DNA of 64,000 bases, from assembly GCA_002269645.1 (NCBI GenBank), contig NIVC01000819.1, positions 124,001 through 188,000 of the forward strand, in the 5' to 3' direction. Both the position numbers and the translations under genes were made by a program. The stretch's first letter is position 1. Every line of letters begins with the position of its first letter. Of this stretch, positions 1-57,854 are shown one piece after another. The notes under the pieces were generated by a model that was given only the letters and a program-made list of their open reading frames with translations, had not been told where the DNA came from and made no database searches. The stretch comes from Macrostomum lignano. Its lineage: Eukaryota.

Positions 1-3000
1 ATAAAATCATAGAAGCGTCATGTAAAAAATCATAGAAGCGTCATAAAACAATCATAGAAGCGTCATGTAAACAATCATAGAAGCGTCATGTAAAAAATCG
101 TAGAAGCGTCATATAAAAATCATAGAAGCGTCATGTAAAAAATAGAAGCGTCATAAAACAATCATAGAAGCGTCATGTAAAAATCATAGAAGCGTCATGT
201 AAAAAATCGTAGAAGCGTCATATAAAAATCATAGAAGCGTCATGTAAAAAATCATAGAAGCGTCATAAAACAATCATAGAAGCGTCATGTAAACAATCAT
301 AGAAGCGTCATGTAAAAAATCATAGAAGCGTCATGTAAACAATCATAGAAGCGTCATGTAAACAATCATAGAAGCGTCATGTAAACAATCATAGAAGCGT
401 CATGTAAACAATCATAGAAGCGTCATGTAAAAATCATAGAAGCGTCATGTAAAATCATAGAAGCGTCATGTAAACAATCATAGAAGCGTCATGTAAAAAT
501 CATAGAAGCGTCATATAAAAATCATAGAAGCGTCATGTAAACAATCATAGAAGCGTCATGTAAACAATCATAGAAGCGTCATGTAAACAATCATAGAAGC
601 GTCATGTAAACAATCATAGAAGCGTCATGTAAACAATCATAGAAGCGTCATGTAAAAATCATAGAAGCGTCATGTAAACAATCATAGAAGCGTCATGTAA
701 AAAATCATAGAAGCGTCATGTAAAAATCATAGAAGCGTCATGTAAAAATCATAGAAGCGTCATGTAAAAAATAGAAGCGTCATATAAAAATCATAGAAGC
801 GTCATGTAAAAAATCATAGAAGCGTCATGTAAAGATCATAGAAGCGTCATGTAAACAATCATAGAAGCGTCATGTAAAAAATCATAGAAGCGTCATGTAA
901 AAAATCATAGAAGCGTCATGTAAACAATCATAGAAGCGTCATATAAAAATCATAGAAGCGTCATGTAAACAATCATAGAAGCGTCATGTAAAAATCATAA
1001 AGCGTCATGTAAAATCATAGAAGCGTCATGTAAACAATCATAGAAGCGTCATGTAAAAAATCATAGAAGCGTCATATAAAAATCATAGAAGCGTCATGTA
1101 AACAATCATAGAAGCGTCATGTAAAGATCATAGAAGCGTCATGTAAACAATCATAGAAGCGTCATGTAAACAATCATAGAAGCGTCATGTAAAAAATCAT
1201 AGAAATCATGTAAACAATCATAGAAGCGTCATGTAAAAACATAGAAGCGTCATGTAAACAATCATAGAAGCGTCATGTAAACAATCATAGAAGCGTCATG
1301 TAAAAATCATAGAAGCGTCATGTAAAAATCATAGAAGCGTCATGTAAACAATCATAGAAGCGTCATGTAAACAATCATAGAAGCGTCATGTAAACAATCA
1401 TAGAAGCGTCATGTAAAAATCATAGAAGCGTCATGTAAAAATCATAGAAGCGTCATGTAAAAATCATAGAAGCGTCATGTAAAAAATCAGAAGCGTCATG
1501 TAAAAATCATAGAAGCGTCATGTAAAAATCGTAGAAGCGTCATAAAAATCATAGAAGCGTCATGTAAAAAATCATAGAAGCGTCATGTAAAAAATCATAG
1601 AAGCGTCATGTAAAAATCATAGAAGCGTCATGTAAAAAATCATAGAAGCGTCATGTAAACAATCATAGAAGCGTCATGTAAAAAATCATAGAAGCGTCAT
1701 GTAAAAAATCATAGAAGCGTCATGTAAAAATCGTAGAAGCGTCATATAAAAATCATAGAAGCGTCATGTAAAAATCATAGAAGCGTCATGTAAAAAATCA
1801 TAGAAGCGTCATGTAAAAATCATAGAAGCGTCATGTAAAAAATCGTAGAAGCGTCATATAAAATCATAGAAGCGTCATGTAAAAAATCGTAGAAGCGTCA
1901 TAATAACAATCATAGAAGCGTCATGTAAAAAATCATAGAAGCGTCATGTAAAAAATCGTAGAAGCGTCATATAAAATCATAGAAGCGTCATGTAAAAATC
2001 ATAGAAGCGTCATATAAAATCATAGAAGCGTCATGTAAACAATCATAGAAGCGTCATGTAAACAATCATAGAAGCGTCATGTAAACAATCATAGAAGCGT
2101 CATGTAAACAATCATAGAAGCGTCATGTAAACAATCATAGAAGCGTCATGTAAACAATCATAGAAGCGTCATGTAAACAATCATAGAAGCGTCATGTAAA
2201 CAATCATAGAAGCGTCATGTAAACAATCATAGAAGCGTCATGTAAAAAATCATAGAAGCGTCATGTAAAAAATCATAGAAGCGTCATGTAAAAATCATAG
2301 AAGCGTCATGTAAAAAATCGTAGAAGCGTCATATAAAAATCATAGAAGCGTCATGTAAAAATCATAGAAGCGTCATAAAAAATCGTAGAAGCGTCATGTA
2401 AAAAATCATAGAAGCGTCATGTAAAAAATCGTAGAAGCGTCATATAAAAATCATAGAAGCGTCATGTAAAAAATCGTAGAAGCGTCATAAAACAATCATA
2501 GAAGCGTCATGTAAAAATCATAGAAGCGTCATGTAAAAAATCGTAGAAGCGTCATATAAAAATCATAGAAGCGTCATGTAAAAATCGTAGAAGCGTCATA
2601 TAAAAATCATAGAAGCGTCATGTAAACAATCATAGAAGCGTCATGTAAAAAAATCATAGAAAGCGTCATGTAAACAATCATAGAAGCGTCATGTAAAAAT
2701 CATAGAAGCGTCATGTAAACAATCATAGAAGCGTCATGTAAACAATCATAGAAGCGTCATGTAAACAATCATAGAAGCGTCATGTAAACAATCATAGAAG
2801 CGTCATGTAAACAATCATAGAAGCGTCATGTAAAAATCATAGAAGCGTCATGTAAACAATCATAGAAGCGTCATGTAAACAATCATAGAAGCGTCATGTA
2901 AACAATCATAGAAGCGTCATGTAAACAATCGTAGAAGCGTCATATAAAAATCATAGAAGCGTCATGTAAAAAATCATAGAAGCGTCATAATAACAATCAT

Positions 3001-3487
3001 AGAAGCGTCATGTAAAAATCATAGAAGCGTCATGTAAAAAATCGTAGAAGCGTCATATAAAAATCATAGAAGCGTCATGTAAAAAATCGTAGAAGCGTCA
3101 TAAAAAATCATAGAAGCGTCATGTAAACAATCATAGAAGCGTCATGTAAAAAATCATAAAGCGTCATGTAAACAATCATAGAAGCGTCATGTAAACAATC
3201 ATAGAAGCGTCATGTAACAATCATAGAAGCGTCATGTAAACAATCGTAGAAGTGTCATGTAAAAACCCATAGAAGCGTCATGTAAATAATCATAGAAGCG
3301 TCATGTAAACAATCATAGAAGCGTCATGTAAACAATCATAGAAGCGTCATGTAAAAAATCATAGAAATGCCATGTAAAAAATCATAGAAGCGTCATGTAA
3401 AAAATCATAGAAGCGTCATGTAAAAACCCATAGAAGCGTCATGTAAAAAATCATAGAAGCGTCATGTAAACAATCATAGAAGCGTCA
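1..3487 (+). repeat. Satellite A, ~23-bp unit AATCATAGAAGCGTCATGTAAAC (variants in the A-run), left part
   Basis: Directly visible tandem array. It stops mid-unit at ...GAAGCGTCA|. Confidence 0.97.
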
Positions 3488-3629
3488 CTAGCAATCTTCG
3501 CCCCCCGATGGGGGACATCTGGATAGAATCCTTGTTCTTTACAAATAAAGACTCCAAGAGAAATAACAAATAGACAGGGTCATAAAGCCTTCATGAAAAA
3601 GCAACAGACATTTCCTCTAAAAACAAAAC

Positions 3630-4500
3630 ATCCCAAGACAGCAAGCATCCCCAGACAGCATTCAAGCATCGATACCTAAATAGCAAACATCACCCAGACT
3701 TCAAGCATCCCATAGATAGCAAGCATCCACCCGATAGCAAGAAACCCAGATAGCAAGCATCCCCAGATAGCAAGCATCCCCCAGACCCCAGATAGCAAGC
3801 ATCCGCCAGATAGCAAGCATCCCCCAGATAGCAAGCATCCGCCAGATAGCAAGCATCCCCCAGATAGCAAGCATCCCCCAGATAGCAAGCATCCCCCAGA
3901 TAGCAAGCATCCCCCAGATAGCAAGCATCCCCCAGATAGCAAGCATCCCCCAGATAGCAAGCATCCCCAAGATAGCAAGCATCCCCAGACCGCAAGCAAC
4001 CCCAGATAGCAAGCATCCACCCGATAACAAGAAACCCCAGATAGCAAGCATCCCCAGATAGCAAGCATCCCCAGACCCAGATAGCAAGCATCCGCCAGAT
4101 AGCAAGCATCCCCCAGATAGCAAGCATCCGCCAGATAGCAAGCATCCCCCAGATAGCAAGCATCCCCCAGATAGCAAGCATCCCCAGATAGCAAGCATCC
4201 CCAAGATAGCAAGCATCCCCAGACCGCAAGCAACCCCAGATAGCAAGCATAACCTGGATACAAAGAGACCTTATAGATATCTAGCAACCCCTCTCAAGAT
4301 AGCAAGTACCTCCACCCCCCAAGAGCAAGCATCTCCCAATAGCAAGTAACCCAGTAGCAAGCATCCTTCCGGTAGCAAGCATCCCACCAATAGCAAGCAT
4401 CCCTCAGATAGCAAGCATCCATCAGATAGCAAGCATCCCCCTGATAGCAAGTATCTATCCTTAAATAGCAATCATCCAACAGAGAACAAGTAGCTAGTGC
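3630..4500 (+). repeat. Satellite B, ~18-19-bp unit GATAGCAAGCATCCCCCA
   Basis: Visible tandem array. A second, shorter copy in the same orientation lies at about 10490-10700. Confidence 0.93.
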
Positions 4501-4544
4501 AACAATTTCCTTAGCTTTATAGTGCTCCGTTTTGTTTGGCATGA

Positions 4545-7510
4545 CACTTTTATGTTTGAAACGGTGTCTCTTTTATGTTTGAAACGGTGGCTCTTTTATG
4601 TTTGAAATTGTGGCTCTTCTATGTTTGACATGACGTCTCTTCTATGTTTGACATGGTGGCTCTTTAATGTTCGACATGATGGCTCTTCTATGTTTGCCAT
4701 GGCGGCCCTATTACGTTTAAAATGGTGTCTCTGTTATGTTTGACATGGTGGCTCAGTTGTTTGACATGGTGGCTCAGTTGTTTGACATGGTGGCTCAGTT
4801 GTTTGACATGGTGGCTCAGTTGTTTGACATGGTGGCTCAGTTGTTTGACATGGTGGCTCAGTTGTTTGACATGGTGGCTCAGTTGTTTGACATGGTGGCT
4901 CAGTTGTTTGACATGGTGGCTCAGTTGTTTGACATGGAGTTACGTATATGTTTGACATGGTGGCTCTTTTATGTTCGACATGGTGGCACTTTTATGTTTG
5001 GCATAGTGGCTCTTTTATATTTGACATGATGGCTATTTTATATTCGACATGTTGCTCTTTTATGTTTGACACGGAGTCACGTATATGTTTGACGAAATGG
5101 CTCTTTAATGTTCGCAATGTTGGCCCTCTTATGTTTGACATGGAGTCACATATATGTTTCACATGGTGGCGCTTTAATGTTTGACATGGAGTCACGTATA
5201 TGTTTGACATGGTGGCTCTTTTATGTTCGACATGGTGCTCTTTTATGTTTGGCATGGTGGCTCTGTTATGTTTGACATGGTGGCTCAGTTGTTTGACATG
5301 GTGGCTCTTTAATGTTTGACATGGAGTCACGTATATGTTTGACATGGTGGCTCTTTTATGTTTGACATAGTGGCTCTTTAATGTTCCCCATGGTGGCTCT
5401 TTTATGTTCGACATGGTGCTCTTTTATGTTTGACATGGTGGCACTTTAATGTTTGACATGGTGGCTCTTTAATGTTTGACATGGTAGCTCTTTAATGTTT
5501 GACATGGTGGCTCTTTAATGTTTGACATGGTGGCTCTTTAATGTTTGACATGGTGGCTCTTTAATGTTTGACATTGTGGCTCTTTAATGTTTGACATGGT
5601 GGCTCTTTAATGTTTAACATGGTGGCTCTTTTTTCGACATGGTGGCTCTTTAATGTTCGACATGGTGGCTCTTTTATGTTCGAAGTGGTGGCTCTTTTAT
5701 GTTTGACATGGTGGCTCTTTAATGTTTGACATGGTGGCTCTTTAATGTTAAATGTTAAATGTTTGACATGGTGGCTCATTAATGTTTGACATGGTGGCTC
5801 TTTAATGTTTGACATGGTAGCTCTTTAATGTTTGATATGGTGGCTCTTTAATGTTTGACATGGTGGCTCTTTAATGTTTCACATGGTGGCTCTTTAATGT
5901 TTGACATGGTGGCTCTTTAATGTTTGACATGATGGCTCTTTAATGTTTGACATGGTGGCTCTTTTATGTTTGACATGGTGGCTCTTTAATGTTTGACATG
6001 GTGGCTCTTTAATGTTTGACATGGTGGCTCTTTAATGTTTGACATGGTGGCTCTTTAATGTTTGAAATGGTGGCTCTTTATTGTTCGACATGGTGGCTCT
6101 TTTAGGTTCGACATAGTGGCTCTTTAGTGTTCGAAATAATGGCTCTTTTATGTTTGACATGGTGGCTCTTTAATGTTTGACATGGTGGCTCTTTAATGTT
6201 TGAAATGGTGGCTCTTTATTGTTCGACATGGTGGCTCTTTTAGGTTCGACATAGTGGCTCTTTAGTGTTTGAAATGGTGGCTCTTTTATGTTTGACATGG
6301 TGGCTCTTTAATGTTTGACATGGTGGCTCTTTAATGTTAAATGTTAAATGTTTGACATGGTGGCTCATTAATGTTTGACATGGTGGCTCTTTAATGTTTG
6401 ACATGGTAGCTCTTTAATGTTTGATATGGTGGCTCTTTAATGTTTGACATGGTGGCTCTTTAATGTTTGACATGGTGGCTCTTTAATGTTTGACATGGTG
6501 GCTCTTTAATGTTTGACATGATGGCTCTTTAATGTTTGACATGGTGGCTCTTTTATGTTTGACATGGTGGCTCTTTAATGTTTGACATGGTGGCTCTTTA
6601 ATGTTTGACATGGTGGCTCTTTAATGTTTGACATGGTGGCTCTTTAATGTTTGAAATGGTGGCTCTTTATTGTTCGACATGGTGGCTCTTTTAGGTTCGA
6701 CATAGTGGCTCTTTAGTGTTTGACAATGTGGCTCTTAATGTTTTACATGGTGGCTCTTTAATGTTCGACATGGTGGCTCTTTTATGTTCGACATGGTGGC
6801 TCTTTAATGTTTGACATGGTTTTTCTTTTATGTTTGACATGGTAGCTCATTTATGTTCGACATGGTGGCTCTTTAATGTTTGACATGGAGTCATGTATAT
6901 GTTTGACATGGTGGCTCTTTAATGTTTGACATGGTGGCTCTTTAATGTTTGACATGGTGGCTCTTTAATGTTTGACATGGTGGCTCTTTAATGTTTGACA
7001 TGGTGGCTCTTTAATGTTTGACATGGTGACTCGTTAATGTTAGACATGGTGGCTCTTTTATGTTTGACCTGGTGGCACCTTAATGTCTGTAATGATGGCT
7101 CTTTAATGTTCGACATGGTGCCTCTTTAATGTTTGACATGGTGGCTCTTTATTGTTAAACATGGTGGCTGTTTAATTTTTGACATGGTGGCTCTTTATTG
7201 TTCGACATGGTGGCTCTTTAATGTTCGAAATGGTGGCTCTTTAATGTTCGAAATAGTGGCTCTTTTATGTTCAACATGGTGGCTCTTTAATGTTCGAAAT
7301 GGTGGCTGTTTAATGTTCGAAATGGTGGCTCTTTTATGTTTGACATAAAGTCACTTATATGTTTTACATGGTGCCTCTTAAATATTAGACATGGTGGCTC
7401 ATTTAGGTTTGACATGGTGGCTCTTTTATGTTTGACCAGGTAACTCTTTTATGTTCGATATGTTGGCTCTTTAATGTTCGACATGGTGGCTCTTCTATGT
7501 TTGACATTGC
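4545..7510 (+). repeat. Satellite C, ~23-bp unit ATGTTTGACATGGTGGCTCTTTA
   Basis: Visible tandem array. It includes a homogeneous sub-run (GTTGTTTGACATGGTGGCTCA) at about 4740-4935. Confidence 0.95.
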
Positions 7511-7580
7511 ACTTCTTTTATGTTTAGCAGTTTTTTGTTTTTAAGGTGTTTTAATAAAAAAAATCTATTTTGCACTACTA

Positions 7581-7634
7581 AGATTCGAACCCAGGTCGCT
7601 ACATTAGCATTCCAGTCTGTTCGCATCAGGGCTA
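7581..7634 (-). promoter_or_regulatory. tRNA-like Pol III A/B-box block inside Helitron 1
   Basis: Minus strand: TAGCCCTGATGCG...GCTAATGTAGCGACCTGGGTTCGAATCT (B box GGTTCGAATC), followed downstream by a T-run. It is not a complete cloverleaf. Confidence 0.55.
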
Positions 7635-8686
7635 TCTTTTTTCAATTGGAGAACATGAATTGTGGCCCTTATAATTCAATTCTTACAGCAAGTCAATTGG
7701 AGCAAAAAGTTATGACATAATCAATTTCTCAGTCAGCCAGTATCAGTCTCAATTTAAGTTGGCAATATGGTTACGCAATTTCAATTCAAGTCGTGTGTGC
7801 ATTTCTTTGACAATGTTTTCAACTTGTTGTGATGCAATCTTTATCACAATCGGAATTCAGCCAGTCAGTTTTTTTCTCTAGCATTCTTACAATGCATTTC
7901 AAGTGGAAAATTTGGCTTGACCTTTGCAAAAAAGCATGTTTTTCGAATATTTAATCCCTTTAACATTGAGCAATTTCTTAGCCAAGATGCATGTACCGTC
8001 CCAGGAAAATTTCTGATCGAATGGTGCAAGTTTGAAGAAAATCGGTTGAGCCAATTTTTCTGAAATCTATCGCATACCCACAGACAACTCATTTTTAGTA
8101 TATAGGACTAGCTAAAGTTTTGCCCCCCTTCGGGGAGCAGAAATAATTAATATTCGTCTAATATAATATACCTTTTAGCAGGAGTACTTTAAGTGTTTTT
8201 CTTAAGCTTAAGCTTAAAATAGGAATTTTTGGAGATCGTTAATAACGCATTTTAGGTAAAACAAAACTATCAACTTTTTACAGTTTTTAGTTTAGAGCCC
8301 TGTATATGTCAACGTGTTTGATAAAAATTATTTTTATCATTTTTGATAAAAAATGGCCTTCGGGTGGCCAATAAGCAAGGGACGAATCCTTTTAAATGAA
8401 AAAAATTCTTAGGGAGGGGGGCTAGGAATCGAATTCTCATTTTAATTCCAGGCTTATGTACCAATAAAACATGTTTGTGCAGAATTTTATAACAGACATT
8501 GAAATTCAACCATACTTGCCTTCTTTCAGAGCTACTTCTACCAGTATGCTTCAGTACGCTACCAGTACCCTTGTAAGCCTTGACATGTCAGCAATCCCCC
8601 CCACAAGCCTTAACATATCAACTCCCCCCTTGACATCTCAGCAATGCTCCCACAAGCCTTGAAATCTTAAAAAATCTGTCTATTTT

Positions 8687-8720
8687 CTAACCCTAACCCT
8701 AACCCTAACCCTAACCCTAA
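8687..8720 (-). repeat. Interstitial telomeric repeat (CCCTAA)5+ in Helitron 2; degenerate second tract at ~9100-9150
   Basis: The sequence reads ctaa ccctaa x5. Confidence 0.9.
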
Positions 8721-9679
8721 AGCATTGAAATTTCAGTAATTCTCTCTAAGAGTCTATAGCACTACTACAGCATTATAGCGATTCCCTGCAAGCCTCGACA
8801 TCGTAGGGATTCCCAAATGAATCTCTTAACTTTGACATGAAGCTTCTTTTTTTTTACATTACGCTTTTTCTATCAGCGATCCCTCCCGTGAGGAGCCAAC
8901 AAATAATGTAATAACTTTTTTCCAATAAACTACATGTAGCTTCTGACATTAGCCTTGACATCTCATTTATTCCCCGTGAGCCTTGACATCTCAGCTATAG
9001 ATAGATAGATAGATTCCCCTCGTAAGCCTTGACATGTCAGCGATGCCCCCATAAACCTTGAAATCTAAAAAATCCCCTGTTAACCTTGAAACGCGCTAAA
9101 ATCTAACCCTCAACCCAAACCTGACGTAAACCTAACTTTCACCCAACCTAAAGCCTTGAAATCACAGCAATTCTTCTTCCCTAAGCCTTGGCATTTAAGT
9201 GATTCCTTCTTTAAGAATCACAGCACTATAACGATTCCCTCCAAGCTTTGACATCGTAGCAATTCCCAAATGAATCTTTTAACTTTGACATGACTTTTAT
9301 TTTATGTATACATAGTGCTCCTTTTATTTTTACATGACTCTTCTTCTATCAGCGCCCCCCCCACCGTGGCAAGCCAACAAAGAATGCAATAAAAAACTTA
9401 AGTAAAGTACATGTACTTTGAAGTAGCTTCTGACTTTTGCTTTAACATCTCAGAAACCCCCCTGTAATCTCAGTTATTCTCTGTGAGCCTTGACGTCTCA
9501 GTAATTCTCCCCAGCACAGCACTGTACTATAGCTTCATTTAATTTTTATATGACATTTCTTTCATGTCTGACATGACGCTTCTTTTGATTTTTACGTTAC
9601 GCTTCTTTTATTCTTCCATGATGCTTCTTAATTTTTTAAATGACACACTTTCATTAGTTTTTATATGAGGCTTCTATAA

Positions 9680-10330
9680 TTTTTTCATGACGCTTCTATG
9701 CTTGTTTACATGACGCTTGTATGATTTTTACATGACGCTTCTATGATTGTTTACATGACGCTTGTATGATTGTTTACATGACGCTTCTATGATTTTTTAC
9801 ATGACGCTTCTATGATTTTTACATGACGCTTCTATGATTTTTACATGACGCTTCTATGATTTTTACATGACGCTTCTATGATTTTTACATGACGCTTCTA
9901 TGATTGTTTACATGACGCTTCTATGATTGTTTACATGACGCTTCTATGATTTTAACATGACGCTTCTATGATTTTTTTACATGACGCTTCTATGATTGTT
10001 TACATGACGCTTGTATGATTGTTTACATGACGCTTGTATGATTTTAACATGACGCTTCTATGATTGTTTACATTACGCTTCTATGATTGCTTGCATGACG
10101 CTTCTATGATTTTTTATGACGTTTTTATGATTTTAACATGACGCTTCTATGATTTTTTTACATGACGCTTCTATGATTGTTTACATGACGCTTGTATGAT
10201 TGTTTACATGACGCTTTTATGATTTTAACATGACGCTTCTATGATTGTTTACATTACGCTTCTATGATTTTTACATGACGCTTCTATGATTTTTACATGA
10301 CGCTTCTATGATTGTTTACATGACGCTTCC
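9680..10330 (-). repeat. Satellite A copy inside Helitron 2 (inverted relative to the host array)
   Basis: Units CATGACGCTTCTATGATTGTTTA are the reverse complement of satellite A. Confidence 0.95.
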
Positions 10331-10389
10331 ATAATTTTTTTTGTCTTGGCGTTAAAAGGCTTTAATTAAAAAAACTCTACTCTCTAAAA

Positions 10390-10448
10390 ATTCGAACCAT
10401 CGTCCCTGCATTTAGCAGTTTAGTCTGTTTACCTCTAGGCTAGCTCTC
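10390..10448 (-). promoter_or_regulatory. Degenerate second tRNA-like block in Helitron 2
   Basis: It shares CTCTAGGCTAGCTCTC, TAGCAG and TTCGAACC with 11943-12002. Confidence 0.45.
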
Positions 10449-10489
10449 ATGAATTTTAGTCATTACACCTAAATAGAAAATATTCCCAA

Positions 10490-10700
10490 GACAGCAAGCA
10501 TCCCCCCAGTAGCAAGCATCCCCTAATACTCCTAGCAAGCATCCACCCAGATAGCAAGCATCTGCAGATAGCAAGCATCTTGCAGATAGCAAGCATCTTG
10601 CAGATAGCAAGCATACCCCAAATAATGTAGAAGCATCCTTCCAGATAGCAAGCATCCTGCACATAGCAAGAATCCCTAAATAGCAAGCATCCCTGGATAG
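10490..10700 (+). repeat. Satellite B, short copy in Helitron 2
   Basis: GATAGCAAGCATC units. It shares the boundary CCCAAGACAGCAAGCATCC with about 3632-3650. Confidence 0.85.
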
Positions 10701-10739
10701 AAATAATCCTATACATGTAGCCAAGCTTATCAAGCGCAG

Positions 10740-11870
10740 TAATCCTTGGCTATCGAGTGCAGTAATCCTTGGTTTATTAATAGCAATAATCCATGGCTTA
10801 TCGAGTGCAGTAATCCTTGGTTTATTAATAGCAATAATCCTTGGCTTATCGAGTGCAGTAATCCTTGGTTTATTAATAGCAATAATCCATGGCTTATCGA
10901 GTGCAGTAATCCTTGGTTTATTAATAGCAATAATCCATGCCTTATCGAGTGCAGTAATCCTTGGTTTATTAATAGCAATAATCCTTGGCTTATCGAGTGC
11001 AGTAATCCTTGGTTTATTAATAGCAATAATCCATGGCTTATCGAGTGCAGTAATCCTTGGTTTGCCAAGAGCAATAGTCCTTGGCTTATCGAGTGCAGTA
11101 ATCCTTGGTTTGCCAAGAGCAATAGTCCTTGGTTTATTGAGTGCAGTAATCCTTGGTTTATTAATAGCAATAGTCCTTGGTTTATTGAGTGCAGTAATCC
11201 TTGGTTTATTAATAGCAATAATCCTTGGCTTATCGAGTGCAGTAATCCTTGGTTTGCCAAGTGCATAATCCTTGGTTTATCGAGTGCAGTAATCCTTGGT
11301 TTATTAATAGCAATAATCCTTGGTTTATTGAGTGCAGTAATGCTTGGTTTATTAATAGCAATAATCCTTGGCTTATCGATTGCAGTAATCCTTAGTTTAT
11401 TAATAGCAATAATCCTTGGCTTATCGAGTGCAGTAATCCTTGGTTTATTAATAGCAATAATCCATGGCTTATCGAGTGCAGTAATCCTTGGTTTGCCAAG
11501 AGCAATAGTCCTTGGCTTATCGAGTGCAGTAATCCTTGGTTTGCCAAGAGCAATAGTCCTTGGTTTATTGAGTGCAGTAATCCTTGGTTTATTAATAGCA
11601 ATAGTCCTTGGCTTATCGAGTGCAGTAATCCTTGGTTTATTAATAGCAATAATCCTTGGTTTATCGAGTGCAGTAATTCATGGTTTATTAATAGCAATAA
11701 TCCTTGGCTTATCGAGTGCAGTAATCCTTGGTTTATTAATAGCAATAATCCATGGCTTATCGAGTGCAGTAATCCTTGGTTTGCCAAGAGCAATAATCCT
11801 TGGCTTATCGAGTGCAGTATTCCTTGGTTTGCCAAGAGCAATAATCCTTAGCTTATCGAGTGCAGTAATC
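10740..11870 (+). repeat. Satellite D, 48-bp dimer of 24-bp subunits (ATCCTTGGTTTATTAATAGCAATA / ATCCTTGGCTTATCGAGTGCAGTA)
   Basis: Visible tandem array. The 16-aa periodicity in the ORF track confirms the 48-bp period. Confidence 0.95.
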
Positions 11871-11942
11871 TAAGTGTTTTTATTTAGTCCTTTAATAAAA
11901 GCTTTTAATAAAAAATTTTACACTACTACTTTTAAACTACTT

Positions 11943-12002
11943 AGATTCGAACCCAGGTCGCTGCATTAGCAGTCTGGTCTGCTCAGCTCTAGGCTAGCTC
12001 TC
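11943..12002 (-). promoter_or_regulatory. tRNA-like Pol III block in Helitron 2
   Basis: Minus strand: GAGAGCTAGCCTAGAGCTGAGCAGACCAGACTGCTAATGCAGCGACCTGGGTTCGAATCT. GACTGCTAAT resembles the tRNA-Ser(GCU) anticodon arm and the B box is intact. A TTTTTT run follows about 30 nt downstream. Confidence 0.6.
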
Positions 12003-12543
12003 ATCGAAGTTATCAGTGAATTTGTACCACTTATATAATTAATTCAACACTCACACCAAGTCAGGTAGAGTAAAAAGTCACGCGAAGCAGTTATGACATA
12101 ATCAATTTCTTAGGCAAGTCAGTACCAGTGTCTATGAAAGTTAACAATATGGTTACGTAATATAAATTCAGTACTGCACTATACTTTCACCCTCAAAGCT
12201 GTGACGCAATTCAATTGAGTGTCTAATTCAGCCAGTACACAGACGATAAATAAAGTGTATTGTGATGCAATCTATTTCAGAATCAGAATTCAACCAGTCA
12301 GATTTTTCTCTAGCATTCTTACAATGCATTTCAGGTCGAAAGAGCTGCTTGACCTTTGCAAAAAATCATGTTTTTCGAATATTTAATCCCTTTAACATTG
12401 AGCAATTTCTTAGCCAATATGCATGTACCGTCCCGGGAAAATTTCTGATCGAATGGTGCAAGTTTGAAGAAAATCGGTTGAGCCGTTCGGGAGAAAATCA
12501 ATTACAAGCAAGCAACCAAGCATTTCATTTTTAGTATATTAGA

Positions 12544-14180
12544 TGTAAACAATCATAGAAGCGTCATGTAAACAATCATAGAAGCGTCATGTAAAAAATC
12601 ATAGAAATGCCATGTAAAAAATCATAGAAGCGTCATGTAAAAAATCATAGAAGCGTCATGTAAAAAATCGTAGAAGCGTTATATAAAAATCATAGAAGCG
12701 TCATGTAAAAAATCGTAGAAGCGTCATAATAACAATCATAGAAGCGTCATGTAAACAATCATAGAAGCGTCATGTAAAAAAATCATAAAAGCGTCATGTA
12801 AAAAATCATAGAAGCGTCATGTAAACAATCATAGAAGCGTCATATAAAAATCATAGAAGCGTCATGTAAACAATCATAGAAGCGTCATATAAAAATCATA
12901 AAAGCGTCATGTAAACAATCATAGAAGCGTCATGTAAACAATCATAGAAGCGTCATATAAAAATCATAGAAGCGTCATGTAAAAAATCATAGAAGCGTCA
13001 TGTAAAAAATCGTAGAAGCGTCATATAAAAATCATAGAAGCGTCATGTAAAAAATCGTAGAAGCGTCATAATAACAATCATAGAAGCGTCATGTAAACAA
13101 TCATAGAAGCGTCATGTAAAAAATCAGATAAGCGTCATGTAAACAATCATAGAAGCGTCATGTAAACAATCATAGAAGCGTCATATAAAAATCATAGAAG
13201 CGTCATGTAAAAAATCATAGAAGCGTCATGTAAAAAATCGTAGAAGCGTCATATAAAAATCATAGAAGCGTCATGTAAAAAATCGTAGAAGCGTCATAAT
13301 AACAATCATAGAAGCGTCACGTAAAAAATCATAGAAGCGTCATGTAAAAAATCGTAGAAGCGTCATATAAAAATCATAGAAGCGTCATGTAAACAATCAT
13401 AGAAGCGTCATGTAAACAATCATAGAAGCGTCATGTAAACAATCATAGAAGCGTCATGTAAACAATCATAGAAGCGTCATGTAAACAATCATAGAAGCGT
13501 CATGTAAACAATCATAGAAGCGTCATGTAAACAATCATAAAAGCGTCATGTAAAAAATCATAGAAATGCCATGTAAAAAATCATAGAAGCGTCATGTAAA
13601 AAATCATAGAAGCGTCATGTAAAAAATCGTAGAAGCGTCATATAAAAATCATAGAAGCGTCATGTAAAAAATCGTAGAAGCGTCATAATAACAATCATAG
13701 AAGCGTCATGTAAACAATCATAGAAGCGTCATGTAAAAAATCATAAAAGCGTCATGTAAAAAATCATAGAAGCGTCATGTAAACAATCATAGAAGCGTCA
13801 TATAAAAATCATAGAAGCGTCATGTAAACAATCATAGAAGCGTCATATAAAAATCATAAAAGCGTCATGTAAACAATCATAGAAGCGTCATGTAAAAAAT
13901 CATAGAAGCGTCATATAAAAATCATAGAAGCGTCATGTAAACAATCATAGAAGCGTCATGTAAAGATCATAGAAGCGTCATGTAAACAATCATAGAAGCG
14001 TCATATAAAAATCATAGAAGCGTCATGTAAAAAATCATAGAAGCGTCATGTAAAAAATCAGATAAGCGTCATGTAAACAATCATAGAAGCGTCATGTAAA
14101 CAATCATAGAAGCGTCATATAAAAATCATAGAAGCGTCATGTAAAAAATCATAGAAGCGTCAAGAAAAAATCATAGAAGC
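12544..14180 (+). repeat. Satellite A, right part
   Basis: It resumes with |TGTAAACAATC, exactly completing the unit interrupted at 3487. Confidence 0.97.
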
Positions 14181-14869
14181 CTTATTTAAAAACTAATGAA
14201 AGTGTCATTTAAAAAATTAAGAAGCATCATGGTAGAATGGTATATGGTAGAGTCATGTAAAAAATAAAAGTAGCACTACGTATACATAAAAGAAAAGTCA
14301 TGTCGAAGTTAAAAGATTCATTTGGGAATTGCTACGAGGTCAAAGCTTGGTGGAAATCGTTATAGTGCTGTGATTCTTAAAGAAGGAATCACTAAAATGT
14401 CAAGGCTTAGGGGAGAAGAATTGCTGAGATTTCAAGGCTTTAGGTTGGGTTAAAGTTAGGTTTAGGTCAGGTGTGGGTTGAGGGTTAGATTTTATCGGGT
14501 TTCAAGGTTAACAGAATAACAGGGGATTTTTTAGATTTCAAGGTTTATGGGGGCCATCGCTGACATGTTAAGGCTTACGGGGGAATAGCTGAGATGTCAA
14601 GGCTCACGGGGTATAAATGAGATTTCAAGGCTAAAGTCAGAAGCTACATGTAGTTTATTGAAAACTTTTTATTACATTATTTGATGCCTCCTCAGGGGAG
14701 GGATCGCTGATAGAAAAAGCATAATGTAAAAAATAAAAGAAGCTTCATGTCGAAGTTAAGAGATTCATTTGGGAATCCCTACGATGTCGAGGCTTGCAGG
14801 GAATCGCTATAATGCTGTAGTAGTGCTATAATGACTTTTAGAGAGAATTATTACTGAAATTTCAATGCT

Positions 14870-14944
14870 TTAGGGTTAGGTTAGGGTTAGGGTTAGGGTT
14901 AGGGTTAGGGTTAGGGCTAGGGTTAGGCTAGGGTTAGGGTTAGA
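14870..14944 (+). repeat. Interstitial telomeric repeat (TTAGGG)~12 with variants; degenerate tract at ~14440-14490
   Basis: Directly visible, about 200 bp before the host 3' CTAG. Confidence 0.92.
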
Positions 14945-15147
14945 AGGTTGACAGATTTTTTAAGATTTCAAGGCTTATGGGGCATAGCTAAGATGTCAAG
15001 GGGGTTGATATGCTTAGGCTTGTGGGGGGGATTTTCTGACATGTCAAGGCTTACAATGTACAATGCAAAGAGACGCTTTCATGTAGTTTATTAAAAAAAC
15101 TTGTACTGAATTTTTTTGGCTCCCCAACGGGGGGCGCTGATTGCTAG

Positions 15148-15430
15148 TTCTCTTCTCTACTCTCTCCTCTCCTTCTCCTCCCCTCCCCCCTCTTCTCTCC
15201 TTTTCTCCTCTCCTCTCCTCTCCTCCCTTCTCCTCTCTTCTCTTCTCTACTCTCTCCTCTCCTCTCCTCTCCTCCCTTCTGCTCTCTTCTCCTCTCCTCT
15301 ACTATCCTCTCCTCTCCTCTTCTCTTCTCCTCTCCTCTCCTTCTCCTCCCCTCTCCCCTCTTCTCTCCTTTTCTCCTCTCCTCTCCTCTTCTCTCGTCTC
15401 CTCTCTTCTCCTCTCCCCTCCTCCTTTCCT
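15148..15430 (+). repeat. CT-rich simple repeat (CTCTC/CTT)
   Basis: Polypyrimidine tract starting immediately after CTAG|T. Confidence 0.9.
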
Positions 15431-15569
15431 CCGGCCCGCAGTCATGCTCTAAGGTATTTTTTCGACCCTGAACCCTAGATTTTCTAAGAATTCTTTCAAT
15501 ATTACACTCGTATTTGAGAAGCTCCACCATTGTCTGTCAAGCAGTACTCAATGAATTCTCCCCGCCTCT

Positions 15570-16061
15570 GTGTCAGCCACCGCTTCCGGAATTTCACCAG
15601 ACGACGACCAGCTGGTGACACTGATTGACAGCGGCGGCCTGCTTCAAGGCAGCCGGCACTCGCTGCACGGCCTGGCGGAGCCATGCGAGCGGCACCCTCG
15701 CCAGTTCCAGCCGCAGCCGGGCAACGCAAATCGCACAACCTACCTGATCGTGTCCGTGCTCACCGCTGTGTTCATCAACCTGCCGTTCGGCCTGGCTGCC
15801 CTGGCCTGCTCAGTCCGCTCGCACTCCGAGCTGGTGACGGCGCTGGCGATGCAGCAGCAGCTGATCCTTCAAGAGCAGCAGCGCGGCCGCAGCTCGCAGG
15901 ACTCGGCTGGGCGAGCTCACCAGCAGAGGCGACGCCTCCGACGAGCTCGACTGTTGGGCAGAGCGGCTCTGTGCGTGAGCCTCACTGGCATTGTCGTGAG
16001 CATGACAACCGTCATCGCTATGTTCACGAGCGGCCTGATTAAGTCCACCCTCTATAGCTGA
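15570..16061 (+). CDS. CD225/dispanin (IFITM/PRRT-like) membrane protein, probably a terminal exon
   Basis: TYLIVSVLTAVFINLPFGLAALACSVRS ... RARLLGRAALCVSLTGIVV fits the two-hydrophobic-segment CD225 pattern. There is no ATG at the ORF start (GTG, with an in-frame TGA at 15552). Candidate acceptors are TGTCAG| (15576) and TTTCACCAG| (15600). Confidence 0.65.
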   Translation: MSATASGISPDDDQLVTLIDSGGLLQGSRHSLHGLAEPCERHPRQFQPQPGNANRTTYLIVSVLTAVFINLPFGLAALACSVRSHSELVTALAMQQQLILQEQQRGRSSQDSAGRAHQQRRRLRRARLLGRAALCVSLTGIVVSMTTVIAMFTSGLIKSTLYS

Positions 16062-16949: not shown

Positions 16950-19400
16950 ATACAAGGACTGGAAGAACTGCTGAGATGTCGAGGCTTACTGGGAGAACTG
17001 CTGAGATGTCGAGGCTTACTGGGAGAACTGCTGAGATGTCGAGGCTTACTGGGAGAACTGCTGAGATGTCGAGGCTTACTGGGAGAACTGCTGAGATGTC
17101 GAGGCTTACTGGGAGAACTGATGAGATGTCGAGGCTTACTGGAAGAACTGCTGAGATGTCGAGGCTTACTGGTACTGGGAGAACTGCTGAGATGTCGAGG
17201 CTTACTGGGAGAACTGCTGAGATGTCGAGGCTTACTGGGAGAACTGCTGAGATGTCGAGGCTTACTGGGAGAACTGATGAGATGTCGAGGCTTACTGGGA
17301 GAATTGCTGAGATGTCGAGGCTTACTGGTACTGGGAGAACTGCTGAGATGTCGAGGCTTACTGGGAGAACTGCTGAGATGTCGAGGCTTACTGGTACTGG
17401 GAGAACTGCTGAGATGTCGAGGCTTACTGGGAGAACTGCTGAGATGTCGAGGCTTACTGGTACTGGGAGAACTGCTGAGATGTCGAGGCTTACTGGGAGA
17501 ACTGCTGAGATGTCGAGGCTTACTGGGAGAATTGCTGAGATGTCGAGGCTTACTGGGAGAACTACTGAGATGTCGAGGCTTACTGGTACTGGGAGAACTG
17601 CTGAGATGTCGAGGCTTACTGGGAGAACTGCTGAGATGTCGAGGCTTACTGGGAGAACTGCTGAGATGTCGAGGCTTACTGGGAGAACTGCTGAGATGTC
17701 GAGGCTTACTGGGAGAACTGCTGAGATGTCGAGGCTTACTGGGAGAACTGATGAGATGTCGAGGCTTACTGGAAGAACTGCTGAGATGTCGAGGCTTACT
17801 GGTACTGGGAGAACTGCTGAGATGTCGAGGCTTACTGGGAGAACTGCTGAGATGTCGAGGCTTACTGGGAGAACTGCTGAGATGTCGAGGCTTACTGGTA
17901 CTGGGAGAACTGCTGAGATGTCGAGGCTTACTGGGAGAACTGCTGAGATGTCGAGGCTTACTGGGAGAATTGCTGAGATGTCGAGGCTTACTGGGAGAAC
18001 TGCTGAGATGTCGAGGCTTACTGGTACTGGGAGAACTGCTGAGATGTCGAGGCTTACTGGGAGAACTGCTGAGATGTCGAGGCTTACTGGGAGAACTGCT
18101 GAGATGTCGAGGCTTACTGGGAGAACTGCTGAGATGTCGAGGCTTACTGGGAGAACTGCTGAGATGTCGAGGCTTACTGGGAGAACTGATGAGATGTCGA
18201 GGCTTACTGGGAGAACTGATGAGATGTCGAGGCTTACTGGAAGAACTGCTGAGATGTCGAGGCTTACTGGTACTGGGAGAACTGCTGAGATGTCGAGGCT
18301 TACTGGGAGAACTGCTGAGATGTCGAGGCTTACTGGGAGAACTGCTGAGATGTCGAGGCTTACTGGGAGAACTGATGAGATGTCGAGGCTTACTGGGAGA
18401 ATTGCTGAGATGTCGAGGCTTACTGGTACTGGGAGAACTGCTGAGATGTCGAGGCTTACTGGGAGAACTGCTGAGATGTCGAGGCTTACTGGTACTGGGA
18501 GAACTGCTGAGATGTCGAGGCTTACTGGGAGAACTGCTGAGATGTCGAGGCTTACTGGTACTGGGAGAACTGCTGAGATGTCGAGGCTTACTGGGAGAAC
18601 TGCTGAGATGTCGAGGCTTACTGGGAGAATTGCTGAGATGTCGAGGCTTACTGGGAGAACTACTGAGATGTCGAGGCTTACTGGTACTGGAGAACTGCTG
18701 AGATGTCGAGGCTTACTGGGAGAACTGCTGAGATGTCGAGGCTTACTGGGAGAACTGCTGAGATGTCGAGGCTTACTGGGAGAACTGCTGAGATGTCGAG
18801 GCTTACTGGGAGAACTGCTGAGATGTCGAGGCTTACTGGGAGAACTGATGAGATGTCGAGGCTTACTGGAAGAACTGCTGAGATGTCGAGGCTTACTGGT
18901 ACTGGGAGAACTGCTGAGATGTCGAGGCTTACTGGGAGAACTGCTGAGATGTCGAGGCTTACTGGGAGAACTGCTGAGATGTCGAGGCTTACTGGGAGAA
19001 CTGATGAGATGTCGAGGCTTACTGGGAGAATTGCTGAGATGTCGAGGCTTACTGGTACTGGGAGAACTGCTGAGATGTCGAGGCTTACTGGGAGAACTGC
19101 TGAGATGTCGAGGCTTACTGGTACTGGGAGAACTGCTGAGATGTCGAGGCTTACTGGGAGAACTGCTGAGATGTCGAGGCTTACTGGTACTGGGAGAACT
19201 GCTGAGATGTCGAGGCTTACTGGGAGAACTGCTGAGATGTCGAGGCTTACTGGGAGAATTGCTGAGATGTCGAGGCTTACTGGGAGAACTACTGAGATGT
19301 CGAGGCTTACTGGTACTGGGAGAACTGCTGAGATGTCGAGGCTTACTGGGAGAACTGCTGAGATGTCGAGGCTTACTGGGAGAACTGCTGAGATGTCGAA
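16950..19400 (+). repeat. Satellite E, 30-bp unit GAGATGTCGAGGCTTACTGGGAGAACTGCT with 36-bp (+GGTACT) variants
   Basis: Visible array of about 80 units. Diagnostic variants recur in blocks. Confidence 0.97.
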
Positions 19401-57682: not shown

Positions 57683-57854
57683 TGCGGCGATGAGGATTTG
57701 GGATTTTTCTGGCGCTTCGGCAATGGGATTCAGACAGCTATTGGGGCTGGGAGGCTGCTGGGCAGCAAAGTTGGATGATGGGAACGATGACGGGCGAGTG
57801 AAATAATCACATAGACCAGCGATAATCACTTGCTGGAACTATAATCATTTTTCA

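What the first reader, a model, noticed from the sequence alone, without database searches (positions are those of the whole stretch)
3487..12544. What looks like satellite soup is a Helitron dimer inserted precisely into the satellite of a third Helitron
Seen in sequence: (1) Satellite A breaks at ...GAAGCGTCA| (3487) and resumes at |TGTAAAC (12544). Removing 3488-12543 (9056 bp) restores an exact unit with no TSD, i.e. an A|T insertion. (2) The insert consists of two minus-strand units, each starting TC(C)TA(A)TATACTAAAAATGA and ending in a CCCC-N3-GGGG hairpin 8-10 nt before CTAG. (3) The CTAG of unit 2 is fused directly to the TC of unit 1 at 8108/8107. (4) The host array runs on to its own hairpin-CTAG|T at 15147. 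Established: TC...hairpin-CTRR termini, A|T targets and no TSD define canonical Helitrons. Inference: the two units differ internally, so this is not a simple rolling-circle concatemer. Either they moved as one composite after 3'-end bypass, or unit 2 inserted exactly at the A|TC junction of unit 1. Both imply a family that nests in its own AT-containing satellite and so builds multi-kb repeat islands.
Basis: partly seen in the sequence, partly recalled or inferred. Interest (0 to 1): 0.88.

Follow-up and report, generated by a model that had tools for sequence, protein, structure and literature searches.

The report
Nested Helitron pair inside sibling's satellite
A 9-kb block that interrupts a 23-bp satellite in the flatworm Macrostomum lignano is two non-coding rolling-circle transposons (Helitrons) joined head to tail and inserted cleanly into the repeat array carried by a third, related Helitron; the reading is correct, but the same arrangement is already known from maize and bats.

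Summary
Satellite A stops at 3487 and resumes in phase at 12544. The 9,056-bp insert consists of two minus-strand units. Each starts TC(C/T)(T/A)ATATACTAAAAATGA and ends in a G/C hairpin followed by GCTAG. CTAG of unit 2 abuts TC of unit 1 at 8108/8107. The host array runs into its own hairpin-GCTAG|T at 15147. Both terminal motifs have a chance expectation of 0 in the window.

The three elements are one family of non-autonomous elements with Helitron1-type ends: TC...CTAG, an A|T target and no TSD. They share a 600-bp 5' core, related 23-bp satellites and a 3' tail containing TTAGGG repeats. The organism is Macrostomum lignano.

Abutment by chance is about 4e-4. It therefore reflects either insertion at the resident element's A|TC junction or movement as a composite after terminator bypass. 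The window cannot separate these two.

Head-to-tail heterologous Helitrons with a CTAG|TC junction were described in maize (2008) and Myotis, with the same two explanations. Repeat-carrying Helitron and Helentron derivatives are also known. The claimed preference for nesting in its own satellite is not supported: satellite A makes up 85% of the visible host. RepHel, genome-wide copies and the host 5' end could not be tested.

Verdict: real, correctly parsed, and a new member of a known kind.

The parts
3..3487 (+). Host Helitron, left part of its 23-bp satellite A array (the array runs off the window start)
   Evidence: TRF; sequence; monomer catalogue
3488..8107 (-). Unit 1, a complete non-autonomous Helitron of 4,620 bp (5' TC at 8107, 3' CTAG at 3488)
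8089..8107 (-). Unit 1 5' terminus, TCCTATATACTAAAAATGA, preceded by the CTAG of unit 2
7508..8107 (-). Unit 1 5' core (600 bp), homologous to the unit 2 5' core
   Evidence: alignment A1; self-BLAST (7827-8052 vs 12260-12484, 93%)
7540..7640 (-). tRNA-like module (A box, B box GGTTCGAATCT, then a T-run) just upstream of the satellite B array
   Evidence: not called as tRNA by ARAGORN or Rfam
4547..7507 (-). Unit 1 satellite B (23 bp; 15/23 identical to satellite A in the same orientation)
   Evidence: TRF
3680..4455 (-). Unit 1 18-bp repeat (ATAGCAAGCATCCCCCAG on the + strand), also present in unit 2
   Evidence: TRF
3488..3514 (-). Unit 1 3' terminus: hairpin CCCCCATCGGGGGG, then CGAAGATTG, then CTAG, followed by host T
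8108..12543 (-). Unit 2, a complete non-autonomous Helitron of 4,436 bp (5' TC at 12543 after host A; 3' CTAG at 8108)
12525..12543 (-). Unit 2 5' terminus, TCTAATATACTAAAAATGA, flanked by host A (GTTTACA|TC)
11871..12543 (-). Unit 2 5' core, including a tRNA-like module at 11890-11990
10736..11870 (-). Unit 2 48-bp (2 x 24) satellite
   Evidence: TRF
10533..10709 (-). Unit 2 short run of the 18-bp repeat shared with unit 1
   Evidence: TRF
10360..10460 (-). Second tRNA-like module of unit 2, just upstream of its satellite A array
9542..10339 (-). Unit 2 satellite A array (35 copies), in the same orientation relative to the element as in the host
   Evidence: TRF
8571..9541 (-). Unit 2 3' tail, about 90% identical to the host tail; contains (TTAGGG)5.7 at 8687-8720 and an internal terminus-like hairpin near 8868-8900
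   Evidence: self-BLAST; alignment A4
8108..8570 (-). Unit 2 private 3' segment (463 bp, absent from the host), ending in the hairpin GCTCCCCGAAGGGGGGC, then AAAACTTTAG, then CTAG
8157..8170 (+). Subterminal inverted copy of the unit 2 5' terminus (TCTAATATAATATA), 50-63 nt from its 3' end and upstream of the hairpin
   Evidence: 11/12, shuffle p = 0.0004
12544..14231 (+). Host Helitron, right part of the satellite A array
   Evidence: TRF
14232..15147 (+). Host 3' tail: two tandem subunits of about 450 bp. The first ends in an internal hairpin-CTGAT (about 14680-14712). The second holds (TTAGGG)12.7 at 14870-14943 and ends in the true terminus.
   Evidence: alignment A4; TRF
15122..15147 (+). 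Host 3' terminus: CCCCAACGGGGGG, then CGCTGATTG, then CTAG, followed by T of a CT-rich tract

Best explanation
Window 1-15147 is a stack of three non-autonomous rolling-circle transposons of one Macrostomum lignano family with Helitron1-type ends (5' TC, 3' hairpin-GCTAG). Each element has three parts: a 5' core of about 600 bp, one or more blocks of 'tRNA-like module + T-run + short-period tandem array', and a 3' end.

Shown: the host element (+ strand, 5' end off the window) carries at least 5.2 kb of satellite A. A 9,056-bp insert sits between an A and a T of one satellite A monomer, without TSD. The insert is unit 2 followed directly by unit 1, with CTAG|TC at the join.

Inferred mechanism: a RepHel transposase supplied in trans nicks at A|TC, unwinds one strand up to the hairpin-CTAG terminator, circularises it and pastes it into an A|T. 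My preferred history is two steps at this locus. Unit 1 first entered the host satellite at ACA|TGA. [quoted passage not shown] That position is the natural cleavage site of the transposase at a resident left end, which would explain why the abutment is exact. Both steps are canonical A|T events. The order of events is inferred, not shown. The confidence given (0.5) is for this full statement including the two-step history; that the locus is three nested and abutting Helitron-type elements I hold at about 0.85-0.9.
For: The ends exceed chance: 3 RTS motifs and 2 LTS 19-mers against 0 expected. The satellite is restored in phase to its commonest monomer, with only a 1-nt ambiguity. Rare monomer variants keep a spacing of 7-8 monomers across the junction: GAAATGCCA at 3364 and 12604, which is 184 bp apart after excision, compared with the CCC variant at 3263 and 3424, 161 bp apart. 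The array was therefore continuous before the insertion.

Family relationship: the 5' cores are 93% identical over 227 bp and alignable over about 600 bp. The unit 2 tail and satellite A match the host at about 90%. Satellites A and B share 15/23 positions in the same orientation. No Pfam domain is found in any ORF, so the elements are non-autonomous. The 3' hairpins fold.

Exact abutment in the same orientation has a chance of about 1/(2 x 1184) within this locus. Independent consecutive insertion giving the same CTAG|TC junction was shown by presence/absence polymorphism in maize (PMC2267711). [quoted passage not shown]
Against: No copy outside the window could be retrieved. As a result, there is no true empty site, no copy count and no autonomous RepHel partner. 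The host 5' end was not seen. Nothing in the window dates unit 1 relative to unit 2. The unit 2 terminator looks intact (8-bp stem), which favours neither history. Unit 2 and the host carry a subterminal inverted repeat that textbook Helitron1 elements lack.
Confidence: 0.5

Rival explanations
1. Composite mobilisation. Unit 2 and unit 1 were already abutting at another locus. The transposase started at the unit 2 5' TC, read through the unit 2 hairpin-CTAG, terminated at the unit 1 CTAG, and inserted the 9,056-bp composite into satellite A in a single A|T event.
For: A single canonical A|TC...CTAG|T event explains both outer junctions. Helraiser reads through an intact 3' end in about 11.7% of events, and natural bypass products exist in Myotis (PMC4778049). 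This family shows other signs of terminus reshuffling. The host tail is a tandem pair of units, each ending in a terminus-like hairpin. Unit 2 also has a private 463-bp 3' end replacing the host-type end.
Against: The dimer must still have formed once elsewhere by abutting insertion, so this history needs at least one more event. The unit 2 terminator is not visibly defective. No second copy of the dimer is available to show it moves as a unit.
Confidence: 0.33
2. Reverse order with a non-canonical target. Unit 2 entered satellite A first, and unit 1 then inserted at the G|T between the unit 2 CTAG and the host T.
For: This was one of the two orders considered for the maize pair (PMC2267711). 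Helraiser uses non-AT dinucleotides in 46 of 1,751 insertions.
Against: GT is not among the prominent alternative targets, which are TT, AC and AA. The canonical alternative explains the same sequence without an exception.
Confidence: 0.05
3. Not transposition. The block is an assembly chimera, or a product of recombination between satellite A arrays of different copies in a repeat-rich, hard-to-assemble genome.
For: The M. lignano assemblies are known to be difficult because of simple repeats and duplicated chromosomes (PMC5730564). Satellite A also occurs inside unit 2 in inverted orientation. Read support cannot be checked here.
Against: A misjoin or crossover would break inside repeats. 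It would not break exactly at a TC 5' end and a CTAG 3' end while also restoring the 23-bp phase and the commonest monomer. Neither outer junction lies in the unit 2 satellite A array.
Confidence: 0.04
4. The elements are Helentron-associated (HINE/DINE-1-like) or Helitron2 non-autonomous elements rather than Helitron1, as in the repeat-carrying elements of oysters and Drosophila. This concerns classification only and is compatible with any of the insertion histories above.
For: They have central tandem repeats, as in Cg_HINE and DINE-1 (PMC7492417; PMC4067079). A subterminal inverted repeat lies 50-64 nt from the 3' end in unit 2 and the host, within the 38-60 bp range given for HINE subTIRs.
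Against: The target is A|T, not TT. The ends are TC...CTAG, with no T-runs at the boundaries. Unit 1 has no subTIR (7/12, p = 0.77). There is no 5' hairpin, which Helitron2 requires (PMC3627910).
Confidence: 0.1

Closest known systems
[quoted passage not shown] 2008, BMC Genomics 9:51; PMC2267711)
   Same: Two internally different Helitrons lie in the same orientation, with the CTAG of one joined directly to the TC of the next, giving a G/T junction in place of A/T. The same two explanations were offered there: consecutive insertion at the A|T made by host A and the 5' T, or a tandem or rolling-circle product.
   Different: The maize elements carry gene fragments, not satellites, and are not nested in a third Helitron. 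In maize the two-event origin was demonstrated by presence/absence polymorphism among inbred lines. Here it is only inferred.
Helibat / Helraiser (Myotis lucifugus): tandem and abutting Helitrons, terminator bypass and joined-end circles (PMC4778049, PMC5876387)
   Same: The elements have 5' TC, 3' CTAG, a palindrome about 11 nt from the 3' end, an A|T target and no TSD. Abutting insertions and read-through generate new 3' ends. The CTAG-TC junction is also the circle junction.
   Different: The bat elements have a known RepHel and experimental proof of mechanism. They carry promoters and gene fragments rather than multi-kb minisatellite arrays.
Cg_HINE of Crassostrea gigas and DINE-1/HINE of Drosophila and mites: non-autonomous Helentrons with central tandem repeats (PMC7492417, PMC4067079)
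   Same: These are non-coding rolling-circle elements whose bulk is a family-specific tandem array between conserved flanks. The arrays keep a fixed orientation relative to the flanks, and flank and array modules are exchanged between elements.
   Different: Those elements insert at TT in T-rich DNA, have 12-15 bp subTIRs and lack the CTRR end. Their monomers are mostly 100-500 bp. Here the target is A|T, the ends are TC...CTAG, the monomers are 18-48 bp, and a subTIR is present in only two of three 3' ends.
Helitron2 (Bao and Jurka 2013; PMC3627910)
   Same: A 3' subterminal inverted copy of the 5' terminus lies upstream of the 3' hairpin (unit 2 and the host).
   Different: Helitron2 also needs a 5' hairpin involving the 5' ATIR, and its 3' ATIR is 20-30 bp from the end. 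No 5' hairpin folds here, the repeat is 50-64 nt from the end, and unit 1 lacks it.
Subtelomeric Helitron-like tandem repeats of Hydractinia symbiolongicarpus (PMC11934779)
   Same: Helitron derivatives build multi-kb repeat islands in an invertebrate genome.
   Different: There the Helitron-derived unit itself (372 bp) is amplified locally into megabase subtelomeric arrays. Here discrete bounded elements with internal minisatellites are nested and abutted by transposition.

Membership tests
Canonical Helitron (Helitron1), non-autonomous | 5' terminus TC | tested here: met
   Both visible 5' ends start with TC (8107 and 12543, minus strand) and share 17/19 nt. The host 5' end is off the window.
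Canonical Helitron (Helitron1), non-autonomous | 3' terminus CTRR | tested here: met
   All three 3' ends are GCTAG (3488 -, 8108 -, 15147 +), 3 hits against 0 expected.
Canonical Helitron (Helitron1), non-autonomous | 16-20 nt palindrome about 11 bp from the 3' end | tested here: met
   G/C hairpins with 5-8 bp stems and 3-4 nt loops lie 9-11 nt before CTAG. The definition is taken from PMC4067079.
Canonical Helitron (Helitron1), non-autonomous | Insertion between A and T with no target-site duplication | tested here: met
   The composite sits in GTTTACA|TGACGC of a satellite A monomer. Excision restores the commonest monomer with a 1-nt ambiguity only. The host 3' flank is T. The 'empty site' is reconstructed from the satellite period and is not an observed paralogous empty site.
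Canonical Helitron (Helitron1), non-autonomous | No terminal inverted repeats | tested here: inconclusive
   Unit 1 has none (7/12, p = 0.77). Unit 2 has an 11/12 subterminal inverted copy of its 5' end (p = 0.0004). The host has 10/12 against the unit 2-type 5' end (p = 0.017).
Canonical Helitron (Helitron1), non-autonomous | Autonomous partner encoding RepHel (HUH Rep + Pif1-like helicase) with the same termini | not testable with these tools
   There is no coding capacity in 1-15147 and no RepHel in the window. No M. lignano genome was reachable.
Canonical Helitron (Helitron1), non-autonomous | Multiple dispersed copies bounded by the same ends at unrelated loci | not testable with these tools
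   Only three adjacent or nested copies are visible, plus a solitary exact 14-nt 5' terminus at 24225-24238 (-) without a partner 3' end.
Helentron-associated elements (HINE / DINE-1-like) | Insertion at TT in T-rich sequence, with T-runs at the element boundaries | tested here: not met
   The flanks are A|TC and CTAG|T, with no terminal T-runs. The criterion is from PMC4067079 and PMC7492417.
Helentron-associated elements (HINE / DINE-1-like) | 12-15 bp subterminal inverted repeats, 2-4 nt from the 5' end and 38-60 bp from the 3' end | tested here: inconclusive
   Such a repeat is present in unit 2 (starting at nt 1, and 50-61 nt from the 3' end) and weakly in the host, but absent in unit 1.
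Helitron2 | 5' terminal hairpin formed by the 5' ATIR with downstream bases | tested here: not met
   The first 60 nt of both units fold no better than shuffles (-0.1 and -0.5 kcal/mol, z = +1.1). The criterion is from PMC3627910.
Homodimeric rolling-circle concatemer (tandem Helitron copies) | The two abutting units are copies of the same element | tested here: not met
   Self-BLAST finds only the 5' core shared at high identity. The arrays and 3' parts differ.

The most novel reading that the evidence does not exclude
This Helitron-N family, built from repeated 'tRNA-like module + T-run + minisatellite' blocks with swappable arrays and duplicated or replaced 3' termini, may be a major carrier and seeder of the short-period tandem arrays that make up about 13% of the M. 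lignano genome, a fraction published only as unclassified 'tandem repeats'. Transposase-guided integration at resident A|TC junctions would then routinely fuse siblings into larger composite elements. If so, Helitron activity rather than replication slippage alone would explain the 'satellite soup' that made this genome hard to assemble.
Probability: 0.2. Interest if true: 0.55.

Novelty: new member of a known kind. Interest (0 to 1): 0.3.

Why it matters
For Helitron biology this is one more clean natural example of abutting and nested rolling-circle elements, with an unusually sharp 'virtual empty site' supplied by the satellite period. It adds no new principle.

For Macrostomum lignano it is more useful. 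The published annotation lists 13.1% tandem repeats and only 3.05% DNA transposons, without mentioning Helitrons (PMC5730564 supplement). In this window about 11 of about 28 kb of tandem arrays are cargo of three Helitron-type elements. If that holds genome-wide, part of the 'tandem repeat' fraction should be re-annotated as mobile-element cargo. That would matter for assembly, for repeat masking and for choosing transgene landing sites in this model flatworm.

The mixed terminal features (Helitron1 ends and target, plus a subterminal inverted repeat in some copies) are a small data point on the Helitron-Helentron continuum.

Tried and rejected
1. Copies from outside the window. A protein search with the 90-aa ORF across the 5' core found nothing. 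Two metagenome scans, one with a 5' core 22-mer and one with a satellite A 32-mer, gave 0 hits. A scan of bacterial and archaeal genomes gave 0 hits. An exact-protein look-up of the neighbouring CD225-like ORF, meant to fetch an allelic or paralogous locus, found nothing on record. Genome-wide tabulation was therefore impossible.

2. tRNA or known RNA in the 5' cores. ARAGORN and Rfam (gathering score, and E up to 1 on the two cores) found nothing. The module is tRNA-like only through its A and B boxes.

3. A fuzzy regex with indels for further 5' ends behaved inconsistently: it gave fewer hits than the shuffles. I discarded it in favour of the DNA search.

4. A partner 3' end for the solitary 5' 14-mer at 24238 was sought and none was found.

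5. A 184-bp target duplication was considered, because 12544-12669 best matches 3304-3429. I rejected it. The similarity stops after 126 bp, and a comparable variant spacing of 7-8 monomers occurs just to the left, independently of the insert. It is ordinary local higher-order structure.

6. An oyster or bivalve origin, suggested by the resemblance to Cg_HINE, was rejected. The PSMD7 exon is 100% identical to Macrostomum lignano.

7. Helitron2 and HINE classification were tested and not met.

8. Other arrays at 15-64 kb show no termini or tRNA-like modules of this family.


Full report
**Observation.**
Satellite A (23 bp) occupies 3-3487 and 12544-14231 (TRF). At 3487/3488 the sequence reads ...AGAAGCGTCA|CTAGCAATCTTCGCCCCCCGATGGGGG. 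At 12543/12544 it reads ...TTTTTAGTATATTAGA|TGTAAACAATCATAGAAGCGTC. Deleting 3488-12543 (9,056 bp) recreates GAAGCGTCATGTAAACAATCATA, the commonest monomer variant on both sides. The junction is ambiguous by a single nucleotide, so there is no TSD.

Read on the minus strand, the insert is unit 2 (12543..8108, 4,436 bp) followed by unit 1 (8107..3488, 4,620 bp). Their 5' ends are TCTAATATACTAAAAATGA and TCCTATATACTAAAAATGA. The 3' ends of both units and of the host fit CCCC-N3-GGGGGGC-N7-10-GCTAG|T. Dinucleotide shuffles of the window give 0 expected matches for either motif, against 2 and 3 observed. The hairpins fold as single-stranded DNA. The unit 2 CTAG is followed directly by the unit 1 TC at 8108/8107. 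The host ends ...CCCCAACGGGGGGCGCTGATTGCTAG|T at 15147.

Two corrections are minor. The spacer before CTAG is 9-11 nt rather than 8-10. Satellite A ends at 14231, and a 916-bp tail lies between it and the host terminus.

**Was the array continuous before the insertion?**
Rare monomer variants answer this. GAAATGCCA occurs at 3364 and 12604, which is 184 bp (8 monomers) apart once the insert is removed. The right flank 12544-12669 matches 3304-3429 better than any other register: 126 bp with at most 2 mismatches, against about 65 bp elsewhere. A second rare variant (AAACCCATA at 3263 and 3424) shows a similar 7-monomer spacing entirely on the left. This is ordinary local higher-order structure that runs across the insertion point. 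It is not a long TSD, because the similarity stops after 126 bp. It supports a clean insertion into a pre-existing array.

**Organism and context.**
The window encodes innexin exons, a CD225-like ORF and a JAB/MPN exon. The JAB/MPN exon is 100% identical to a Macrostomum lignano PSMD7 protein, with the next hits at 68% or less. About 28 kb of the 64-kb window is tandem arrays.

**Anatomy of the three elements.**
- Self-BLAST and alignments show one family. The two 5' regions align over about 600 bp and are 93% identical over 227 bp.
- The unit 2 tail (8571-9341) matches the host tail (15056-14249) at about 90%. Unit 2 carries its own satellite A array (9542-10339) in the same element-relative orientation.
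- Satellite B of unit 1 is a 23-bp relative of satellite A: 15/23 identical in the same orientation, against 10/23 in the reverse control.
- Both units share an 18-bp repeat.
- No ORF in 1-15147 has a Pfam domain, so all three elements are non-autonomous.

Three further features emerged.
(i) Each array is immediately preceded by an 85-100 bp tRNA-like module with an A box (TAGCCYAGAGG), a B box (GGTTCGAATCT) and a T-run. The modules lie at 7640-7540, 11990-11890 and 10460-10360. ARAGORN and Rfam do not call them tRNAs.
(ii) Unit 2 is itself a mosaic. It has a unit 1-like 5' half (core, 48-bp array, 18-bp repeat), then a host-like 3' half (module, satellite A, tail), then a private 463-bp 3' end.
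(iii) The host tail is a tandem pair of subunits of about 450 bp. Each ends in a homologous hairpin motif: the internal one is GCCTCCTCAGGGGAGGGATCGCTGAT and the terminal one is GGCTCCCCAACGGGGGGCGCTGATTGCTAG. This is a duplicated 3' terminus.

Together these features show a family that frequently reshuffles modules and 3' ends.

**Classification.**
I used the published definitions. For Helitron1 these are 5' TC, 3' CTRR, a palindrome about 11 bp from the end, an A|T target and no TSD (PMC4067079). For HINE/Helentron they are a TT target and subTIRs 38-60 bp from the 3' end. For Helitron2 they are ATIRs plus a 5' hairpin (PMC3627910).

All testable Helitron1 features are met. The HINE target rule and the Helitron2 5' hairpin are not met. 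One wrinkle remains. Unit 2 has an 11/12 inverted copy of its own 5' terminus 50-61 nt from its 3' end (shuffle p = 0.0004). The host has a 10/12 match at the equivalent place (p = 0.017). Unit 1 has none. I therefore file the family as having Helitron1-type ends and target, with an inconsistent subTIR. RepHel and dispersed copies remain untested.

**How the dimer arose.**
The two units are not copies of each other, so a homodimeric rolling-circle concatemer is excluded. Within the locus as it stood before unit 2 arrived there are 1,184 AT dinucleotides. Random A|T choice would produce this exact same-orientation abutment about 4 times in 10,000. Some mechanism is therefore required.

Two documented mechanisms fit, and both keep every event canonical.
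(a) Unit 1 inserted first. Unit 2 then inserted into the A|T formed by host A and the unit 1 5' T. That position is the transposase's own cleavage site at a resident left end.
(b) The pair formed elsewhere and moved as one element after the unit 2 terminator was bypassed.

Consecutive independent insertion producing exactly this G/T junction was shown in maize by presence/absence among inbred lines (PMC2267711). Abutting insertions and about 11.7% read-through are documented for Helibat/Helraiser (PMC4778049). The CTAG-TC junction is also the circle junction (PMC5876387).

I prefer (a), at roughly 0.5 against 0.33, because (b) still needs (a) to have happened once. The window cannot decide between them. 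Insertion of unit 1 at G|T is possible but non-canonical (about 0.05). An assembly or recombination artefact is unlikely (about 0.04), because both outer breaks coincide with transposon termini and restore the satellite phase. Independently of the order of events, I hold the structural reading (three nested and abutting Helitron-type elements) at about 0.85-0.9.

**What is not supported.**
The inference that the family 'nests in its own AT-containing satellite' rests on one event. Satellite A is 85% of the visible host, so a random hit would land there anyway. The other 28 or so arrays at 15-64 kb carry no termini or modules of this family. The 'soup' is therefore only partly explained: about 11 of about 28 kb of arrays.

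**Novelty.**
Repeat-carrying rolling-circle elements are well known: DINE-1/HINE, oyster Cg_HINE and Hydractinia. Head-to-tail heterologous Helitrons are also known. I found no paper linking Helitrons to tandem repeats in Macrostomum. The genome paper lists 13.1% tandem repeats and 3.05% DNA transposons without naming Helitrons. The finding is a new member of a known kind. Its local value is for annotating the M. lignano genome.

**Limits.**
No M. lignano genomic sequence beyond the window was reachable. Copy number, real empty sites, the host 5' end, the autonomous partner and read-level support all remain open.

Noticed in passing
window 7540-7640 (-), 11890-11990 (-), 10360-10460 (-): Each tandem array inside the Helitrons is directly preceded by a conserved tRNA-like module (A box TAGCCYAGAGG, B box GGTTCGAATCT) followed by a T-run. 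This resembles a pol III unit or a SINE head. ARAGORN and Rfam do not call it a tRNA.
   Followed up: partly
window 23395-23745 (-) and 52171-52531 (-): There are two copies (about 85% identical) of a tRNA-derived SINE of about 350 bp. It has a GGGGGCYRTAGCCCAGC head with a GGCTCGATTCC B box and ends in CTCTAATAAAAAAA. The flanks of the two copies are unrelated.
   Followed up: partly
window 24225-24238 (-): A third exact copy of the Helitron 5'-terminal 14-mer TCTAATATACTAAA lies here (4 hits at up to 2 mismatches against 0.5 expected). It is flanked by T instead of A, shows no similarity to the 5' core beyond about 20 nt, and has no matching hairpin-CTAG end downstream. It may be a truncated or different-subfamily left end.
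   Followed up: partly
window 14232-15147 (+); 8571-9345 (-): The Helitron 3' tail is a tandem duplication of a unit of about 450 bp. The internal copy still ends in a terminus-like hairpin plus CTGAT (about 14680-14712, and about 8868-8900 in unit 2). This amounts to a duplicated or alternative 3' terminus.
   Followed up: yes
window 14870-14943 (+), 8687-8720 (-), degenerate copies near 14440-14500 and 9080-9140: Interstitial telomere-type repeats (TTAGGG)n are carried inside the Helitron tails. Copy number differs between elements (12.7 against 5.7).
   Followed up: no
window 8157-8170 (+); 15084-15095 (+): A subterminal inverted copy of the 5' terminus lies 50-64 nt from the 3' end in unit 2 (11/12, p = 0.0004) and in the host (10/12, p = 0.017), but not in unit 1. 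This is a Helentron/Helitron2-like trait on elements that otherwise have Helitron1 ends.
   Followed up: yes
window 3304-3429 vs 12544-12669: A 126-bp stretch of satellite A, including the rare GAAATGCCA monomer, is repeated 184 bp (8 monomers) apart across the insertion site. I interpret it as local higher-order repeat structure and not as a TSD.
   Followed up: yes
window 16958-19399 (+): This is a 2.4-kb array of a 30-bp unit (ACTGGGAGAACTGCTGAGATGTCGAGGCTT). Its core, GCTGAGATGTCGAGGCTTAC, closely resembles the short motif repeated in the Helitron tails (GCTGAGATGTCAAGGCTCAC). It lies outside any recognisable Helitron boundary, beyond a CD225-like ORF.
   Followed up: no
window 15150-15432: A CT-rich low-complexity tract of about 280 bp begins immediately after the host Helitron's 3' CTAG|T.
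   Followed up: no
window 37579-38493 (-), 42811-43635 (-), 56843-57829 (-), 15570-16061 (+): GC-rich host exons are interleaved with the arrays: two innexin paralogues, a PSMD7/Rpn8 exon (100% identical to M. lignano) and a CD225-like ORF. About 28 further minisatellite arrays at 15-64 kb show no ends of this Helitron family.
   Followed up: partly
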